A DNA stretch of 64,000 bases from Mytilus trossulus (Eukaryota), in NCBI RefSeq assembly GCF_036588685.1, contig NC_086375.1, forward strand, positions 56,978,001-57,042,000, given 5' to 3'. Below, piece after piece: positions 11,501 through 23,500 of the stretch. Below the pieces are notes generated by a model. That model worked only from the letters and a program-made list of their open reading frames with translations, ran no database searches and was not told the origin of the DNA. A program made the position numbers and the translations under genes. Numbering within the stretch: the first letter of the stretch is position 1; each line of letters begins with the position of its first letter.

Positions 11501-14500
11501 GTATGAATGGACTTGCTTCCCTGGAAAGAAAACTGAGATTGTGTTTTACAGTACAAAAGTTATGAGACACAAATCAGACATATGTTTACTACTACAGGGA
11601 TCAATGGTGAGGTCTGACTGACCTGTCCATAGTAAATGTAAATGACTCCCACCTTCACCCCAAGTCCATGATGTCTAAGTTTGGAATAAAATGACAGGTG
11701 GTAGGGTCTAGAAAAGTGATATGCATATGTGTGGCTTATGAGATTGACCTTGTATGTCATTCAATCTTTTTGAAATGAAAAACAGGAATGAATATGGTTT
11801 AGGCATTGGTATCTAAATCTTTTACAAGTTCTCAAAACACACACAAGAGGGTGTGGGGTGACCCTAGGGACTACCCCTTTTTTTCATTTGATTTTTTATA
11901 TTGTCCCATACATGAATATACATAGTTGATGGGTGGGGATCTCGACCGTTATCAAGTTTTCAAACAGGAGGGGTGGGGATCTGGACCGTTATCAAGTTTT
12001 CAAATAGGAGGGGTGGGGACCCCCATGACTTCCCCTATATTTCATTTGATTTGTTATATTGTCCAATACATGAATATATATTGTTGAGGGTGGGGATCTC
12101 ATCTGTTTCTAAGTATCAAACAGAAGTGGGTAGGGTGACCCTAAGGACTCTCCCTATATTTCATTTGATTAGTTCTCACACATGAATATATATGGTTTAA
12201 TTTAAAGGTGGGGATCTCAACTGTTTCCAATTTCTCAATCAGATGACTGCAGGGACTCCCCCAAAATTTCATTTAATTTAGACTGACCTATCAAAATTGA
12301 GAAGAAAAAAAAAACCCTTGAAATTGCAGTAATATGTTTAATTTGAAAAGAATTTAACATGCATTACAAACATTTAACACTGATAAAAAAAATTATACTG
12401 TTACCAGGAACATATATATTGTTAGATAAACTGTTCCCAGCTGTCACTTGTATTGGATTTTGACATTAAAGTTGGTGTACAAAATAATTTCTGCTTTTCT
12501 TTCTTTTAAACAATTTTGGTTTTCAATTCTTATGTTTATATTTATTTACCATGCGTAGCTGTATTTTGTCACCTGTCTGGATTTTTTTAGTTGATAGCCC
12601 CAAAACCCCGATTACCCTTATCCGCTTCCGGAATCGAATCCGATATTGTAATCTCACGGCAGCCATTTTGTATACAATGTTGTTTTTGACAGAAAGTGAG
12701 ATATGATTTTACTTGGATTTACACATTATTTATCAGCGATTTTCTGTATAAAGCTAGCGTATCAAATTGAACATCGCTGTCATGAATAGTAATGATGAAA
12801 ATAAGTTTGAGATCGTTTTTTAGGAAACTTTGGTAAAAATGTTTGCAAAGTTATTTTTTTATTTTCTTTCAACTCAAGGTCCGTCGGTCATCGTAGCTAG
12901 TAATTAAGTAGAAAGTCTGACTGCAAAAGTGGAAGGTCACAGACCCTAGACCACAGCTAATTTGAACCCCTGCGTCCAAATTAAAAAGATTCGAAAATTT
13001 CGTCTTCTAATTCAAAATTGCAGCCAATAGCGTGATCAGTTGAACTTATATATGAAGTTGACTACGTATTGACGACAAACAATATTCCTACGAAATCTTA
13101 ACTCCTTGTCTTTAGAGATTTTCGGCGATTAAATATTTCATACATTTGTTCTTTGACATCTTAGCCAAAAGCTCAACAGTCAGGGTTAGGATGGAAATCC
13201 ATCCAAACTTAAGATTTAGGTATTTGGATGGATATTCCATCCAAAAGAAAAAGGATGGACTTACCATCCATTTGTTTAACAGTTTTAATGGATGGCTTTC
13301 CCTTCCAATTAGAAGATATATGTTTGATGGATAAACCATCCATTTTTTTTCCCTCTGTGCTTGAAAATAGTAGTATACATCTTACACAAATTCAGCAGTT
13401 AGAAATGAATACAGAGAGGATCATCAAGATTGAATGGTCAATAAAAGGATACCATGCTTTTCGGATAAAGCCTCACTCACAAATTGAGTTAGATGTGTTG
13501 CCCGAGGAAGGAAATCCTTTCAGCCAATATGCAACAAAGGTAGTAATGCCACTGCTTCAAGAGATTTCTCCAGATCTTCACAATGTTTCAACCGACATGA
13601 GAGAAGAAAACCACCAAAGGGGACAGCTTATGAAAGATATTGCAGGTTTGTTCATGTTGTTGTTACTCTATTTATATAGTTCATGTACTTTACCATGTTT
13701 ACATTTACCTTGGTTAAAATTTTACTGACACCTACTCATGACAATGTGTCCCCTAAACATGCTAAATGAGGCTAAGTTATACATGTTATATATTCTTTTA
13801 GTCATTTATATATAATAAACACTTTGCAAATTAAAAAGGATTAACCAGTTTTTATCAAAGCTTGGGTAGCTCAATAAAGTCAGTCAGAACATCAGAAATC
13901 TATTATTTTTCTTTTTTTTTGCACAGGAAAACAAGTGGGGAGAGTTCCTGCAAATCTTTGCACAGCTTTCAGAAATATGATTTCTCGGAACACTATCAGA
14001 TGCATTAAGTGTAAAGTCACAGGACCACCAAGACTCTCAGCAAATCCACCATCAAACCAACGATACCGGTCAAACAATAGAGGTCATGACAGACCAGGTG
14101 GGGGAGCAGACATTCCTTGTTCTTATTATTTGCATATACGTGACCGGATGTTTGCAGATACAATGCATATTCTTGAAGACTGTGTACCTCTTAGGGAACT
14201 TGATGAAAGAGTACACGCATGAACATCATGTAAACAAATTTATTGATATCAATTCATACAGCAAGTTCAAAACAACAAGCATTTGTATTCTTAATCATGT
14301 ATGATACACAACATATTATGTAATCATGTTAGATATGTAATATTTTTTTAATATGTATATAAAAATACAACAATATGAAGAAAACATACCCCCACTGTAA
14401 GGATCACCAAACTTTTATAGAATTTGATAATAATCCAAAAATAATCAGAGCATGAAAATTAAACTTGGTAAAAATGGAAGAGACTACTGCAGCATTCATT

Positions 14501-17500
14501 TATAATTCTTTATTTCTCGAATGTCTAGTTGCATTGTTTTTACATAGAATGTCTTCTTAACTTGTAAATAGACATTTGTTGCTCTCCTTAAAATTTATAT
14601 ATATACATATCATTAAATCAAATCAATACAGTTTTACATTCCCAAACACAATCATAATACATGTACTGGTGCGTGGATCCTTAAATTAACATGTTTATTT
14701 TCTTTTCTTAACACTTTAAATACTGTATGAAAAGCAGGGTGAAAACAAAACAAGTACATGATGAATATTAACAGTAGTAAACATTGTGATTAAGTACAAC
14801 ATATGAATATTAGGATAATCCCAAAGTAAGAATTGGGTGGAGCATATAGAAAATAAATTTATCAAAAATATTGTACACACAGTAAAACAAGTAAACAATG
14901 TAAAGTAAAAAACAGTTATCAAAATACATGAAAATCATAGTAATTCAAACAAATGTAAACAAATTTATCAAAATACATGTAGTTTATAACAAATGCAAAA
15001 TCAAAAACATGGTAAATGGAGGAAGATTATAATATAAACAGCAAATTTGGTACTTCAATCATAAATGAATATGACAATCACATTTATTCAGTACATAAAA
15101 TACAAATTAAAATATAAAATTGACATCATTGTACAAATGTCTCTTTTGTGATCATGACGTTATCAGACTACAACAAGTTAATTCAAGACAATGTGATTTT
15201 TTATTTGAGAGGACTTTTACTCATTATGCTTAAAGTAAGATTAAAACATCATAAACAATTTTTGCAAATACTGCCCTCAATATCAACATGATCAATGAAA
15301 TATATACGAGATATGGAATATCACTAGGGTTGATGATGATTGGAACATAAAAGACACAAATTGTAAACATTTAACATTGCAATTTGTAATAATTAACATC
15401 ATGAATGGATGAAAAAAGCCTACACTATCTTGATGTACATAAAAAATGATTATTTGTTTGATTCAGTGCCTTTCTTTCTCCCTCTGCCCTGTCCCCGACC
15501 TCTGCCCCTGCCCCTTGTTTCAACTCTTTCTTTTGGATTAACTCTGTTTTTCCTAACCCATATACGTTTTTTTATATCTGCTATTCTGTCTTTGTCCAAA
15601 GCAATTGCATTTTCACCAGATACAAAAGCTTCTCCCAATTCCTTCCTTTGGGATTCACCTAAGCCTATACCTGGCAAAAATGAGAACTGCTCTGGTGCTT
15701 TCAGGGGAGAAGGTTCTACAGCTTGTTTTTTAACAGTAGATTTGTTCAATTTCAGGAGCAATGATTCTCTTCTTGTCTCTATCATTCCGTCTTTAAAATC
15801 AAGAAGACTCTCATTTTCTTTGAATTTTTTGATGAAATCGTCTGTACCTGTATAGTGGACCTCTCCATTTTCCCTTTTTATTAGGCAGAAGTAAGCTAAT
15901 CTCTCTGCCCCAACTGATGCATTTGTTAACTTGTCAAAAATTTTAAGATTTCGGTCAAAATGCTTCCTTTTTCTATCCTTCTCTCTTCTTTCCATCTGCG
16001 TGGGCGTACCATTTTGTTTGCTCATAAACTTGCCCTTTTGGTTTCTTTTTCTTCCTGTCAAATGACAAGAAGTTAAAAGTGTTATCATTCCATCAAAATG
16101 GTATCATAATTATTTAAAAAGTTTATATAAACAAATGATAAAATGGACAATACATATACATATTAATTTTATACCAGTTTGTTAAGATTGAGTTGTTGTT
16201 TCTACTTATCAAATGTGTTTTTAATAAAGTTATCATCTCTCTAACTTAGTATGTTTTTTTCTAATGAAAAATAAAATAGATTATAGCTACATGTACAACC
16301 AACAGATCTGACAGCTACACAAGGTGTTGGTGTAACCATATAGATCTTGAAATGTAATAATTATTCAAATTGGTACTCAGTTCATTTGCAACACTCATAA
16401 CTAAAAGAAAGTTTAGCGCTTCAATACTGAAAAATTATGTAATCAGTCATGGTTTGCACTATTGTTTAGAACATAAATTGTTGGTTTTCTTGTTTGGAAC
16501 ACATCATTTTGGGGTCTTTCCAGCGTGCTAGGTGGAAGAATCTTTTGCTCCATGTTGAAGGTAGAAGTGACCTATAGCTGTGTACATCATTTGGTCTCTT
16601 GCAGAGAGTTGTCTCATTGGCAATCAGACCACATTCTTTTCATTTTTAAAATATGTACTTACTTGGACTTGGTGTTTTTGAGGTTGATGGCACTTCTTCT
16701 ACTGCATCTAACATAAAGGTTGATGGTGTTGGTATAACTGGACTCAACTCTTCAGGCATTACGTCATCTCCTAAGTCCACCTCATTACTATCAACTATGT
16801 CAATAGAAATCGGCATAATGGTAGATTCTCCTCCTAAAGTATCAACAGCCAAGTCATGAAGAGAAGGTGCATCTAGATCTTCGTCATTTACTGTGTCCAT
16901 AGCTATATTATTTAGGTGGATATCTATAATATTGCCTTCATTTTGTAACCCATCATCTTCTGCAAACACTGTTCATAAAGAAAATAAAAGTACAAAAAGT
17001 CAATAAATGTTTTGTCTCAATTTGTAAACATGACGTTTTCCCTGTTTTAGTATTATGGCTTCTTATATTCATATTGTAGTTGCCATTTATCAGGTTGAGG
17101 AGGGCCCAAGGCACAGAATATGGACATTTATTATAACTGCAATTAATATGATAAACATGATCAATATCTGAGATTTATACTTTACTAGTCATGATAGTGG
17201 CAACATTAATGAAACAGAAAGATGCCATGAATTAAGAACATTTTCATCATAAATTAAATTCAAAAATGTTTAATATTTACTATATATGATAAATTCAAAA
17301 CAGATTGTATTAGACATTGATAAAGAAGTTGAACTTTCGCAATCTTACCTAAATAATTTTCCTGATTTTCTGCTGCAATCACAAGGTTATAAATAGGGTC
17401 ATCAATTCCTTCTGAAAACAGTAAAATTTATTAATCAGCTGATTGAAAAAATGGATCAATTATGCATGCTACAGTCAAATTATTTCTTCTAATTCGAAGA

Positions 17501-20500
17501 TGCAATTATTAGTAATTTTTTAAGCATGCAATCAGGCAACTGTACGTGTACAAAAATCATGCAATTATCAATATTTTGTTCCTTAATAAATAAAGTTGTT
17601 AAATTATCATACAAATGGTAGTGTCATCTAAATTTAAAAAAAAAATAACGTTCATTTCAAAGTTCTCCCTAGATAAAAGAGTCCAGCAAAGTTCTAAAAC
17701 ACATTTAAATTGGTGTCTCGATTTTAACATGGGATAAAATTTAGTGAGCTTTACATACCACACTAGCATTATAAGTTCTCCAACTCTTCATTTAAGAAAT
17801 TACTATCCCCATCTACACTGTCAAGATAAGCAGCAGCAGTTGATATTTCCTCCAAAAACTTTATATGATCCTCCTTCCGAGTGGTTTTACTTCTTATCAT
17901 TTCCCTATATAAATCAAGGAACATGAGCTTATTAATTTCATCAAGATCATCAATTGTATCTAAAATTTTGTTGTCAATCTCTTGAATTGTAAGTGAATCA
18001 ACAGACAAATATTTTTCTCTCTCTGATGGAAGAATGTAGACAGGATGGTGAATGGATGGATCATTTGGTGGTGGCTGATGTAAAAGCATATCCATTATTC
18101 GATAACCTCTCTTTCTATTTGATTCTCTTGTAAAATACAACAGTTCTTGATCTAGAATATCAGCTGAAATTGATGTTAATACTGGTCCATGTTTTTGGTC
18201 ACTTATATAACCAGTTTGTCGAAGGCGTAGTCTCCACTCATTTATAGGAGCTTCTAAATCTGGTTCTTTTCCATGCAAGTCCTCATATACGCTTCCTACA
18301 ATACTGGTTACAGATTTTTTAATCTGTTTCAGTGATTGATTATTTCTACAAGTTGACAACCATACTTTTTCAGTTGGAACACCTCGTTTCAACCATGTCT
18401 TTACAGATTTATTTTCTTCTTCAAGAATGAAGTCAAACCCTTGACCTTTGCTCTTATTCCCTGATTTGGATAGACTACAGTGAGAGGCAAAATGTGTTTT
18501 TAGTTCAACTGGCATTAGCTGATGTACAAAATGATCAAATACTTCAATGTCTTGGTATTTGGGATGGTTCCTTCCATGAAAGAGCTCCTTACTCATAAAT
18601 TTTCCTGCTTGCAGAAGAATGTAATTGTTGCGTCTCACAGCCATTCTTATATTTATGATAGCTTGAGTATACCTACATACCATTTCAAATAGATACAGAT
18701 AATTCGCATTGTCACTTTTTGTCTTTACATATGAAATGTAGTCTTGAGGACTAGGATCATGCTTTTCATGTAGACATTTTTCAACATATGGCTTGACCAA
18801 CTCTAAAATTGTACCTAAATGAAATATCATGATGAGTTGCCATGTCTTGTGGTTGTCAGAACATGCCAATGCTGATTTCTGGGCCTTTTCAGATCTAAAT
18901 CCCATTACCTCAACTAATGATTTCATGCATACATTCCAGTTCAATTCCATAAAGCTCTTCATAAGGTTCATTTCATAATGACCATCACCACAAATAAGGA
19001 ATACCCAATCAAATTCTTGAACATATCGTGATCTTGTATTAGGATGTGCTTTGACTTCATGATCTTCAACATTCTTAATACCTAAAAATCCTTCTTCACA
19101 TTCTAAGCATACAAAGTACTCTTCAACAACTCTTCGTACCAATCCATGCGGAAGCCCATCACAGCAAACGAATGTCCAAAATCTTTTTGGGGTTTCATCA
19201 TCGTCTTTCAAATATTTAGAAATTCTTCCTTTTTTACCAATATGTCGTAGAACTAATACGATGCTGTCAATAGAATTGGGATTTACAAATACAGGATCCA
19301 ACAGACAAATTTCAGCTGGAATGTCATTATGTGAAGATTCAACATGGCTATATTTCTGTGGATTTTCAACAACTGGTTTGGAAATACCATACTCATTGAC
19401 AGTGCTTTTTCTTGAAAAGTGTTTCTGTTTGACACCATCAGTACTTTTAGTAGTCTTTGCTTCTATCAGCGCCTCATGACACTGTGAGCATTTTCTCTTG
19501 TTTTTCTCAAATAAGCAGCCACACCTTGGACATTTTTTATATTTCTGTTCTATCTCTAATTCAACAATAGTTTTGTCCACATGATCCTTCCATAGATTAT
19601 TTTCCTCGTCAAATATAACTTCCTCTGACACTTGTTGGATAGCTAAGTCCAATACATGATACAGTTCATTGTAGTGATTTTGCTTAATATCCGAATAAAA
19701 ATCTGTACTTGTATCTTGACTATCACCTGACTGACACATACTTTCTATAATGTTCTCTTTTCCTTCAGAAGTTATCCACTTTCCTGGTGTTAAACTTTCA
19801 TTCTGTTGAAGGTTTTTGTTTTCTGTTACCTTTATTGCAGCAACATTTGTAATTACAGACATTTTGACCTTATTATTAGCATTTATGTTCCAACTTCTCC
19901 CTATGACCTGTTCATTATCAAAAACGAATATTACATCCCCACTTGGACAATTGGTCTCTCTTCCAATATTTATATCTGAAACAAAATTATATACTGTGGC
20001 ATATTTTGCCCCTGGAATAGCAGTTCCCAAAACATTACAAGCCGTTTTGTTTTTGGTAAAGGAATAAACAACTAAGTTCTGCATAAAAGACCAGGCTCCA
20101 ATGAACTGAGGGTCGCATAAACGATAAATACTTTCAAGTACCGGAATGAAATTTTCTACTTTAATTGTTGTTGTTGTTTTTCCAGTGAGTGCCAAAACAC
20201 ATTGTATAACAAGCTGATCAAACTGATTAATGTACTCATTGATATCGATGCTCTCAAGTGTTTTCAGATTGTTGTAGGGAAAAGACTTTTGATGATTTTG
20301 TATAATATTTTTCATTTCCTGATTAGTATGAACATGTCCAATCATTTTAGCTATACATTCAAGTTTTTCAGATATTTCTAACGAGGAAAATAACTGTAAT
20401 AATTCATCCATAACATTGTCAGTAGAACATCCTGGATTGTTCGAACTGCAAATTTGACAATCAATGGAATGAGCATGGTACTGGTATAGTTTTATATTAA

Positions 20501-23500
20501 CTGTGGTATTGGAGCTTTTTTTCCGAGTAGATCTATATCTAAACAGAATGCTTCTACATGCATTACACAAAAAATCTGGATGAATCAAAGGGTCATCTTC
20601 ATGCAAACAGATATCAAATATATCCATTAGTTCCTGCGTAAATTTAAATTTTCCTACTCTTTTTTTACACTCAGTCTGCCTGCAACAGAGACGGCACAAA
20701 TTTTGAAGCCTTTTTACATGCTCTGAAATAAAAAAAGAATATTATAGGACAGTTGATATCAAGTGAACGCAAAAATTTTGAAGTCATTAATTTGTTTCTG
20801 AATTTATCACAGCTTAAAATTTACACTAAATATAAAAAATAGAAAATGTGGTATGATATCCAAGGATCCAAGATTGTTAATGTCAGCAATTATATATATA
20901 TCCGTATTGCCTTCAATGAAGAGCAAAAGCCCACACCTCATAGCAAGTTAAATTTTAAAAAATACTGGCCATGGCCATCTTATTTCTTCAAAAGAAATAA
21001 CCAATATCATAGATTTAAAACAAACCTTCTGTCTGTAAACTTATAAATTAATAAGAAACTAAGGTCTGGTTTTGTTAAGGGACTAAGGAAAAAAGTATAA
21101 TTGTCTTGGGGCCGGATTCAGAATAAAAGCAAAACTATCATTTGACTATGTAAAATGTAGGATTTTAAAAAAAAAAAAAATTTCGGGACAGACTATATGT
21201 GAACCAAATCTAGTTTAGTTAAAATTCACTACTTAAAATGCCAATAAAACTTAAGGGTCGACGTTTTGAGCATGTTGTTCCATTAAAAAAAATATGGTAC
21301 GCTTACGGAACACCAGTATACTTATTTTATTTCATCCTCCTTCATCAAAGTTCATTATAAACCATTGAATTTATGTATACTGGAGATAAATGGGCAATCA
21401 TTCATGTCAGACTGTTAAATCATGACAATTATGTTCTACATCTAAAATCCATGCGGGGTATTTAAGACATCATGCAAAACATGCAACTTGTACTTTCATT
21501 TGGTTTGGGGTGGGCTACATGCACTGTTTAAAATTCTGTACACAAAAGTAAATCTTAACAATTCTGACAATATCATACACTGAAAATGATAATTCATACT
21601 CACTTTTTAAGTAAAATTGTAAGACATAAATTGTGACAATTATTTGGGTTTCAGTGTGTCATACAATTTTTCTTCAAAATATTGAGGACAGATTATTTAT
21701 TAAAAATATATAGCTTTCAGACATTAAAGCCAAATTTGTATCTGTAACTTTGTGTATCATGTTTATTATCACATGCCTATTCAGAAAATGATCTGATAAG
21801 GACAAAAAACAAAAGTTGTGTTTACCATATGTAATGTAATCTGTTGAAAAAAAGGGATGTCACAGTAAGTCAATTTTTATTTTATTGAACATGTTGAATT
21901 GCTATTTAGTTTATTTATTGCATGTTTTAGTGTGTTATTGCAATATCAGATCCAGAACAGGTGAAACTGTTATATATATATAGAAGGGATAGGCAAAGAA
22001 CCCTTTAAATAAGTGAAATTCCGTTGAAATAAAATTTAAACGTCACGCAAAAAAGGGGGGTCCACCCAATCATGTCAATATAACAGCACATGTGGGTGAA
22101 AGACAACCAACAGAATCGTAAAGCAGACGGATGGAATTTCCATCCACTTTATGTATAAAATAATGGATGGATTTCCCATCCACTATTATTAACAAAGTGG
22201 ATGGATTTTCCATCAAATTTTGTCTATACGCTTTTTTAAAATAGGATGGATTTTCCATCCAAATTTCAACGATCGTTTTCATGTGGCAGAAATGCATCAG
22301 ACGTTCGGTCAACGTTCGGACATTTCCCGTTGATATTTTGGGTCATTAGGCTATTTTATCATTAAATGTATATCTTATGAATGAAAATATGCCTGTTTTT
22401 ATCATGAGGAAATATTTTGAGCTCCACAAATAGCTATATTCTTACCAGGTATGCTCGGATCGTTTTCAGGTTCAGTCGCCATTTTTCCGTGTTATTGTTG
22501 ATACGAAAATCACGTGATCGATGACAAAACCTCGTGATAACCTATGCTATTTTTACCACGGGATTTTCCTCTAAATTAACACCGATATGCAACGTACACG
22601 CTTAAAATATTCGATTTTCTTTAATACGCAGTATTGGATGGATTTAACATCCAAATATGAGGGATGGATTTCCATCCTAACCCTGACTGCTCAATGGATA
22701 ATAAACTACACAAGGATTCATAATGAGCTCTACTTCCTATGGGCAACTTCAAAACTTTTGGGAAAATCAACAATCATTTAAGGTTTTTCTTGTCATATTT
22801 TTTGTAATCCAGAATGAAAAGTATGAAAAAAACTGTCCAATAAGTTATAAATAATAAAGTAGCCAGCAAGATGATAACAATGGCACGTATTTCAGCATTT
22901 ATTGGGTAGCACACAAATCGAGGGTGCTCGCATAAGGCAGCTTAACTGCCTAAAAATGAGAGATATTTTGAATGCATTTTCCTGAAATTTGACCTGTCTT
23001 TAAAGTAAGTTATTTGAATTTTGACAAATGAATGTAGTTAAATGTCAATTATTTAAAACTTGTACTAAGATAAATAATTAATCAACAATCAAAACTAATT
23101 TTAATACCTATGTGATGTGATATCTGATGAAATTTTAAAACCTTGAGATCTATATAAAAATCTGATGACCTGATGGAAAAGATTTGATTAAGTAAGGTAT
23201 TGGTTTTGAATTCCTATTAATAGCCTATACACCTATTAGAAGAGTTCCAACAACATTATATCACATGCAATGAATTAGATAATAGTGTCCAACCTGATGA
23301 CATATTATTTCAACTTTGAAATTTATCAACAACTAAAATAATGCTATACTTCTGTGATTCTCTATCATAATTAACTCAATATAAATCAAGCTTTCTCCTT
23401 CTAAATTAGTGGCACAAAAAAATATACAGGACATTACCTCTAAAAAGTGTGTCAAAGCTTCCCCAGCTGTTGAGGTAGGTGGTGTAGCAAATAATGTAGC

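What the first reader, a model, noticed from the sequence alone, without database searches (positions are those of the whole stretch)
15450..22482. One first exon, two proteins: the transposase exon lies inside intron 1 of an accessory gene
Seen: the 37-nt exon 22482-22446 ends in phase 1. It can splice in frame either to the acceptor at 20722 (996-aa transposase) or to the acceptor at 17411, which starts a chain of phase-1 exons (63, 306, 605 nt) giving a 336-aa protein. The 63-nt exon has no in-frame ATG and begins only ~360 bp after the transposase stop. Known: maize En/Spm produces TnpA and TnpD from one precursor in a similar way. Inference: alternative splicing or polyadenylation sets the transposase-to-regulator ratio, possibly by tissue.
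Basis: partly seen in the sequence, partly recalled or inferred. Interest (0 to 1): 0.8.

Follow-up and report, generated by a model that had tools for sequence, protein, structure and literature searches.

The report
Mussel transposon: transposase and helper co-transcribed
A young 9.5-kb cut-and-paste transposon of the mussel Mytilus trossulus transcribes its transposase and a conserved helper gene as one spliced RNA, much as maize En/Spm does, but the proposed splice that skips the transposase exon to make the helper was not seen.

Summary
The exons are real. Spliced contigs from two public runs, taken as RNA from their splice pattern, show exon 1 (22482-22446) joined to 20722 and the 63-nt exon (17411-17349) joined to the 306-nt exon (16968-16663). 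NCBI's 996-aa and 280-aa Mytilus trossulus models match the transposase and the last junction.

That donor lies at 17759, 10 nt after the transposase stop. The transposase exon is therefore an internal 2964-nt (3 x 988) exon, and the observed mRNA carries the transposase ORF followed by the helper exons. The maize Spm tnpD mRNA has the same layout. The junction 22446^17411 was not seen, and no 336-aa product is in the protein collections.

Several indirect points favour skipping:
- The frames are compatible, and all four introns are phase 1.
- The reading frame stays open for 44 codons upstream of the first internal Met.
- Four out-of-frame ATGs lie in the way of that Met.
- A relative has a donor right after its transposase stop.

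Helper homologues follow diverged transposases, so it is a conserved partner gene. Its core folds weakly like a MADS-box DNA-binding module.

Verdict: one transcription unit is shown; the shared-start exon skip is plausible (about 0.5) but unproven. Earlier notes of this scan on other DNA of this genome already described this transposase type and a helper gene.

The parts
22662..22689 (-). 5' terminal inverted repeat (28 nt, begins CAGTCAGGG)
   Evidence: Perfect inverted repeat with 13177-13204. The same ends occur in two other full copies, L001 and L002.
13177..13204 (-). 3' terminal inverted repeat
22690..22694 (.). Target-site duplication TTGAG (partner at 13172-13176)
   Evidence: The other two copies have TTTGT and TTGAA, so the duplication is 5 bp.
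22446..22482 (-). Exon 1, coding part (ATG plus 12 codons plus 1 nt, phase 1). The transcription start upstream is unknown.
   Evidence: Joint 22446^20722. N-terminus of NCBI model P0031. A similar 12-residue peptide begins the oyster model P0009.
20723..22445 (-). Intron 1 (1723 nt, GT..AG, phase 1). It contains a cluster of GGATGG-N4/5-CCATCC palindromes at 22120-22266.
17759..20722 (-). Exon 2: transposase exon, 2964 nt = 3 x 988. Stop TAA at 17771-17769, a second in-frame stop TAG at 17765-17763, donor GTG|GTATGT after 17759.
   Evidence: Homologues carry PF12560, and there is a weak DUF6589 match.
17412..17758 (-). Intron 2 (347 nt, GT..AG). An AATAAA lies at 17432, 20 nt before the acceptor.
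   Evidence: Joint 17759^17411 in run X2.
17349..17411 (-). Exon 3 (63 nt). It is open only in phase 1, has no in-frame ATG, and has one out-of-frame ATG at 17402.
16663..16968 (-). Exon 4 (306 nt, phase 1 to 1), acidic. The first in-frame ATG is at 16900. Out-of-frame ATGs lie at 16956, 16953 and 16941.
   Evidence: Joint 17349^16968 in X1 and X2; NCBI model P0023.
15450..16054 (-). Exon 5, coding part (605 nt including the stop). It encodes the conserved helper core and an RG-rich tail.
   Evidence: The junction is as in NCBI models P0023 and P0028. Homologues. Model.
13221..13349 (.). 3' subterminal GGATGG-N4/5-CCATCC palindromes. The 5' sets lie at 22632-22679 and 22120-22266 and flank exon 1.

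Best explanation
The element is a recently active 9.5-kb DNA transposon of Mytilus trossulus. It has 28-nt inverted ends, a 5-bp target duplication, and three copies 99.8-99.9% alike. It is transcribed on the minus strand as one five-exon unit.

Shown: exon 1 supplies the ATG and 12 codons and is spliced to a 2964-nt internal exon that encodes the rest of the 996-aa transposase. Ten nt after the transposase stop, a donor joins this exon to exons 3 and 4 of the accessory gene. The full-length mRNA therefore carries the transposase ORF followed by the helper ORF.

Inferred: the helper protein is made from a second mRNA in which the large exon is skipped, so that exon 1 joins 17411. It would have 336 aa, with an acidic N-terminal half, then a basic helix, beta-hairpin and helix module, then an RG-rich tail. 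Skipping keeps the frame, so both proteins would share the start codon and the first 12 residues.

Also inferred: the balance of inclusion and skipping sets the transposase-to-helper ratio. The helper may bind the palindromic subterminal repeats that flank exon 1.
For: Spliced RNA:
- Joints 22446^20722, 17759^17411 and 17349^16968 all have GT..AG ends, and coverage is on exons only.
- The genome holds only three copies, each with its introns. The spliced contigs therefore come from RNA, not from a retrocopy.
- NCBI models match: 996-aa P0031 and the exon 4/5 junction in P0023.

Frame logic:
- All four introns are phase 1, and exons 2, 3 and 4 are multiples of 3.
- Exon 3 is open only in the frame that exon 1 would deliver.
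- 44 codons are open upstream of the first internal Met. My rough estimate of this happening by chance at this base composition is about 0.03.
- Four out-of-frame ATGs precede that Met.

Comparison:
- The decayed C12 copy (47% identical transposase) has a phase-1 acceptor and a GTG|GTAAGT donor 7 nt after its stop. A more distant family has AAG|GTGAGA 8 nt after its stop. Sites this strong occur at about 0.0002-0.0003 per nt.
- In two distant families both ORFs begin right after an acceptor. This fits a leader exon spliced to either one.
- Helper homologues follow diverged transposases on the same strand.
- The Spm tnpD mRNA likewise carries two ORFs in tandem (PMC1636069).
Against: - The joint 22446^17411 was not seen in four runs.
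- The joint 17759^17411 rests on one contig with only 21 nt on the shorter side.
- No 336-aa product exists in a collection of 5.8 billion protein clusters; only 280-aa NCBI models that start at the internal Met are there.
- NCBI annotates the transposase and the helper as separate genes.
- Contig depth on exons 3-4 (6.6 and 3.3) is no higher than on exon 2 (2.4-10.6). A skipped mRNA, if it exists, is not dominant in these samples.
- Splice sites in the relatives are predicted, not verified. Two distant families show no clear donor after the stop.
Confidence: 0.5

Rival explanations
1. The helper is a separate gene in practice. Its mRNA starts from an internal promoter near the end of the transposase exon or in intron 2. 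Exon 3 is then untranslated leader, and translation begins at the Met at 16900, giving the 280-aa protein that NCBI annotates.
For: NCBI gives separate gene ids with 280-aa products. No exon 1 to exon 3 joint was seen. In two distant families the helper exon has its own ATG just after its acceptor, and P0040 starts there.
Against: The one contig that crosses the 17411 acceptor continues into the transposase exon. Four out-of-frame ATGs lie between 17411 and 16900. The frame stays open for 44 codons upstream of that Met. The 20 residues just before that Met are identical in the 91%-identical relative P0038.
Confidence: 0.25
2. Exons 3-5 serve mainly as a spliced 3' untranslated region of the transposase mRNA. 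Three exon junctions downstream of the stop could mark it for nonsense-mediated decay. Helper protein would then come from this RNA only inefficiently, by re-initiation, or not at all.
For: The only mRNA form observed has the helper exons behind the transposase stop. Depths on exon 2 and on exons 3-4 are similar.
Against: The helper ORF is intact in all three copies. It is conserved as a protein over 114 cluster representatives and next to diverged transposases. Re-initiation after a 996-codon ORF is not an established route.
Confidence: 0.12
3. The transposase and the helper are joined into one fusion protein, either by read-through of the stop or by an alternative donor upstream of it. The two ORFs are in the same frame in the full-length mRNA.
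For: Exon 2 is a multiple of 3, so both ORFs share a frame. The same holds for the C12 relative.
Against: Two in-frame stops (TAA, then TAG one codon later) precede the donor. No strong phase-1 donor lies just upstream of the stop. No fusion of a full-length transposase to the helper was found; P0100 joins only a transposase fragment to a helper fragment.
Confidence: 0.04

Closest known systems
Maize En/Spm (CACTA) transcription unit: tnpA and tnpD
   Same: It has one transcription unit and alternative splicing. The transposase ORFs lie in what is intron 1 of the helper mRNA. The long mRNA carries two ORFs in tandem. Subterminal repeats surround the promoter and first exon (PMC1636069).
   Different: The superfamily differs: ends are CAGTCAGGG rather than CACTA, the target duplication is 5 bp rather than 3 bp, and there is no Transposase_21 match. 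Here the shared exon would carry the start codon itself. The short helper mRNA, dominant in maize, has not been seen here.
SmTRC1 of Schistosoma mansoni (animal CACTA)
   Same: It is an animal DNA transposon with several spliced transcripts, some with two ORFs in tandem (PMC1636069).
   Different: The transposase family is different. No homology between the helper proteins was tested.
N-RAG-TP of Aplysia (Panchin and Moroz 2008, as cited in PMC8355894)
   Same: It is a mollusc transposon whose protein carries the RAG1 N-terminal zinc domain. PF12560 is recorded for the 100%-identical P0001 and scores above the cut-off in relatives.
   Different: No N-RAG-TP sequence was compared here. Its gene structure and any helper gene are not known to me.
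Drosophila P element
   Same: Alternative splicing of a single transposon transcript decides which protein is made (my own knowledge, not checked here).
   Different: The P element retains an intron and so truncates the transposase into a repressor. Here an unrelated helper ORF would be reached by skipping the whole transposase exon.

Membership tests
En/Spm-type single transcription unit (works-like test) | The long mRNA contains the transposase ORF followed by the helper ORF | tested here: met
   Joints 22446^20722, 17759^17411 and 17349^16968. The exon 4/5 junction is in NCBI model P0023.
En/Spm-type single transcription unit (works-like test) | A short mRNA joins the first exon directly to the helper exons | tested here: inconclusive
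   Joint 22446^17411 is absent from two contig runs and from two raw runs with almost no reads. No 336-aa product is on record. The frame logic favours it.
CACTA / En-Spm superfamily (membership) | CACTA termini, 3-bp target duplication, Transposase_21 domain | tested here: not met
   The ends begin CAGTCAGGG. The duplications are 5 bp in three copies. Pfam gives no Transposase_21 match.
RAG1 N-terminal zinc-domain transposases (N-RAG-TP-like) | PF12560 (RAG1_imp_bd) domain at the N-terminus | tested here: met
   PF12560 is precomputed for the 100%-identical P0001. P0003 scores 27.1 bits and the L006 ORF 37.5 bits, against a cut-off of 23.3. The window's own protein did not reach the listing threshold in hmmscan.
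DUF6589 (PF20231) type catalytic core | Pfam match above the gathering score | tested here: inconclusive
   16.5 bits for the window's protein and 24.2 bits for the L007 ORF, against a cut-off of 27.
Transib / RAG | 5-bp target duplication and a RAG1-core transposase | tested here: inconclusive
   The 5-bp duplication is met. The transposase fold was not modelled here. Pfam shows no RAG1 core match.
MADS-box (SRF-type) DNA-binding domain, for the helper core | Long basic helix, beta-hairpin and helix fold, plus the SRF-TF sequence signature | tested here: inconclusive
   In the model, residues 11-80 have block-mean pLDDT 88-97. The top Foldseek hits are all MADS domains, at E 0.03-0.5. An independent VIA search puts NRF1, SRF, MEF2 and SEP3 on top at Z 4.1-4.9, below the level that excludes a common arrangement. 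There is no sequence match to Pfam or PDB profiles.

The most novel reading that the evidence does not exclude
An animal DNA transposon outside the CACTA group uses a 3-kb frame-neutral cassette exon as a switch. Inclusion gives a transposase that pairs a RAG1-type N-terminal zinc domain with a DUF6589-like core. Skipping gives a MADS-like DNA-binding helper. Both come from one promoter, share one start codon and the same 12 N-terminal residues, and the promoter sits between the helper's or transposase's palindromic binding sites.
Probability: 0.35. Interest if true: 0.65.

Novelty: new variant of a known kind. Interest (0 to 1): 0.45.

Why it matters
If the exon skip is real, it is a convergent animal counterpart of the maize En/Spm tnpA/tnpD arrangement in an unrelated transposon lineage. 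That lineage also carries the RAG1 N-terminal zinc domain. It would make splicing-based control of transposition directly testable in a bivalve, because the element is young, intact and transcribed.

Even without the skip, one result bears on annotation. The transposase mRNA carries the helper exons behind its stop. This explains why annotation pipelines split the locus, and it shows how two-gene transposons in molluscs should be annotated.

Tried and rejected
Contigs of relatives in other species, and the Logan contigs behind P0001 and P0166, could therefore not be read.
- The protein-atlas search could not take the new sequence.
- Two scans of metagenome contigs with the helper profile and with P0025 found nothing.
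- Word searches with exon 5 and exon 4 peptides found only the 280-aa NCBI models and unspliced ORFs. No product starts with the exon 1 peptide.
- Cluster look-ups gave no M. galloprovincialis transposase isoform names that could link LOC143045500 X1/X2 to the helper isoforms X3/X4.
- I tried to find first exons in relatives L003, L007 and L008 by scanning for an ATG plus a donor. The scan recovers the true exon 1 in the window as its top hit but gives nothing convincing in the relatives. Their inverted ends were not found in the 10-kb pieces either.
- The match of acceptor phases between transposase and helper exons holds in 3 of 5 families. This is not significant on its own.
- The 30-nt loose end of X2 at 17834 is not in the window.
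- The joined 336-aa model was not searched, folded or looked up.
Full report
**What is there.** The finding lies inside a 9,513-bp DNA transposon on the minus strand. It has perfect 28-nt inverted ends at 13177-13204 and 22662-22689 and a TTGAG target duplication.

The genome (1.3 Gb) holds two more full-length copies on another chromosome. They are 99.80% and 99.93% identical, with their own 5-bp duplications TTTGT and TTGAA. The element has therefore moved recently.

The proteins are 100% identical to NCBI models of Mytilus trossulus. The contig length recorded for one of those models, 88,129,055, equals that of contig C5. I therefore take the genome to be M. trossulus.

**The observation.** Direct reading confirms the following:
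- The ATG is at 22482, and the 37-nt coding exon ends in phase 1 at CTG|GTAAGA.
- The acceptor ...TTATTTCAG| lies before 20722.
- The acceptor ...CTGTTTTCAG| lies before 17411.

The later exons, with corrected coordinates, are 17411-17349 (63 nt), 16968-16663 (306 nt) and 16054-15450 (605 nt). All four introns are phase 1. Exon 1 plus the large exon gives 996 aa, which is NCBI's XP_063425767.1 (P0031). Exon 1 plus exons 3-5 would give 336 codons.

Exon 3 is closed in the other two frames and has no in-frame ATG.

**RNA evidence.** I had one call each for finding runs and for laying reads. Two runs from different studies, kept as Logan contigs, cover the exons and not the introns. They show three GT..AG joints:
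- 22446^20722: run X2, 30 nt on the shorter side. X1 ends at 20723 with 8 loose letters that equal the end of exon 1.
- 17349^16968: X1 and X2.
- 17759^17411: X2 only, 21 nt on the shorter side.

The runs are only guessed to be RNA. However, the genome has just three copies of the transposase and of the helper exon, all with their introns. A retrocopy therefore cannot explain the spliced contigs.

Two raw RNA runs gave three reads in all and say nothing. The joint 22446^17411 was not seen.

**What this changes.** In fact a donor GTG|GTATGT lies 10 nt after the TAA (17771-17769) and is joined to 17411.

The transposase exon is thus an internal exon of 2964 nt (3 x 988). The mRNA actually observed is exon 1, transposase exon, exon 3, exon 4, and onward. 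It carries the transposase ORF followed by the helper ORF.

[quoted passage not shown] It also reports a similar tandem arrangement for an animal CACTA element, SmTRC1. The En/Spm comparison is apt for the long mRNA. The short mRNA remains hypothetical here.

**For the skip.**
- Skipping the 2964-nt exon keeps the frame.
- Exon 3 is open only in the frame that exon 1 would deliver.
- The frame stays open for 44 codons upstream of the first internal Met at 16900. My rough estimate of this arising by chance at this base composition is about 0.03.
- Four out-of-frame ATGs (17402, 16956, 16953, 16941) would intercept ribosomes scanning towards that Met.
- The 20 residues just before that Met are unchanged in a 91%-identical relative, P0038, whose later part differs at about one residue in ten.
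- A decayed copy on C12, with a 47% identical transposase, has a clear phase-1 acceptor before the same motif and a GTG|GTAAGT donor 7 nt after its stop. A family with a 34% identical transposase has AAG|GTGAGA 8 nt after its stop. Donor scores that high occur at about 0.0002-0.0003 per nt in those loci.
- ORF calls in several bivalve relatives read through an acceptor just before the conserved EHV...CRLC motif. The spliced oyster model P0009 begins with a 12-residue peptide resembling exon 1.
- In two distant families both the transposase ORF and the helper ORF begin within a few nt of an acceptor. This fits a leader exon spliced to either one.

**Against the skip.**
- The junction is unobserved.
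- The exon 2 to exon 3 joint rests on one short contig.
- Word searches with exon 5 and exon 4 found only 280-aa NCBI models that start at the internal Met, annotated as genes separate from the transposase, plus unspliced ORFs.
- Contig depth on exons 3-4 is not above that on exon 2. A helper-only mRNA does not dominate in these samples, unlike tnpA in maize.
- Splice sites in relatives are predictions. Two distant families lack a clear donor after the stop.

**The helper gene.** ORFs homologous to exon 5 lie on the same strand, 0.6-2.2 kb downstream of intact transposase ORFs in four diverged families of this genome. Those transposases are 34-39% identical to this one. A profile search finds 114 cluster representatives at E up to 0.001. 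The helper is therefore a conserved partner, not a captured fragment.

Pfam and PDB sequence searches give nothing.

An AlphaFold model built on 41 sequences is confident (block-mean pLDDT 88-97) for residues 11-80 of the exon 5 peptide. It shows a 31-residue basic helix, a beta-hairpin and a short helix. Foldseek's best matches are all MADS-box DNA-binding domains (SRF, MCM1, MEF2, SEP3), at E 0.03-0.5. An independent all-against-all structural search puts NRF1, SRF, MEF2 and SEP3 on top at Z 4.1-4.9, with the next match at 3.5.

This is weak, and by the tool's own notes it is compatible with a common arrangement. It is a lead and not a classification. A dimeric DNA binder would suit the GGATGG-N4/5-CCATCC palindromes at both ends, which flank exon 1.

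**The transposase.** The N-terminal RAG1-type zinc domain PF12560 is recorded for the identical P0001 and scores above the cut-off in relatives. DUF6589 matches are below the cut-off. The element is not a CACTA member: its ends begin CAGTCAGGG, its duplication is 5 bp, and it has no Transposase_21 match. The nearest described element is N-RAG-TP of Aplysia, as cited in PMC8355894. I did not compare sequences with it.

**An oddity.** Because exon 2 is a multiple of 3, the helper ORF lies in the transposase frame in the long mRNA. The two are separated by TAA, one sense codon and TAG. The C12 relative shows the same phase match. The skip model does not need this. It may be a trace of an ancestral fusion, so I list read-through or fusion as an unlikely rival.

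**Limits.**
- The joined 336-aa model was not searched or folded; the work was done exon by exon.

**Verdict.** A single spliced transcription unit carrying both genes is shown. A shared start codon with skipping of the transposase exon is the best reading, at about 0.5, but it is unproven.

Earlier notes of this scan on other DNA of this genome already described this transposase type and a 'conserved helper gene'. I confirmed the helper's conservation independently.

Noticed in passing
window 13405-14222 (+): A third gene, convergent with the others, lies inside the element. It has two ORF pieces (13405-13640 and 13935-14222), and their sequence looks HIRAN-like by eye. Pfam gave no match at E up to 0.01.
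   Followed up: partly
window 22690-22760: The element sits inside another repeat. The 72 nt outside the 5' end match at least 37 other places in the genome at 92-95% identity, and the matches stop at the insertion point.
   Followed up: no
window 19448; L002 (G000:C5:46750450-46760449): One of the two C5 copies has a nonsense change (AAA to TAA) at the position of 19448. The contig of run X1 carries the same letter, so a copy with a broken transposase is transcribed. Logan ORFs P0034 and P0035 look like the two halves.
   Followed up: partly
window 17834: A contig of run X2 leaves the window sequence at 17834, 63 nt before the transposase stop. It continues with 30 letters that occur nowhere in the window. 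It could be a variant copy, a chimeric contig or an unknown joint.
   Followed up: partly
proteins P0055, P0100: P0055 (1303 aa) has the helper module at its N-terminus, followed by a long array of C2H2 zinc fingers. This may be a domesticated fusion or a merged gene model. P0100 joins a transposase fragment directly to the second half of a helper.
   Followed up: no
proteins P0059, P0061, P0076, P0143: Helper homologues of other families carry an extra C-terminal module with a W-Y-P-G ... F-K-W-P pattern, possibly Tudor- or chromo-like. The window's helper lacks it.
   Followed up: no
protein P0166 (65% identical family): Its ORF ends ...NWYVYIRY. Back-translated, this would read through a TG|GTATGT donor. 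In that family the transposase stop may therefore lie beyond the splice, in the next exon.
   Followed up: no
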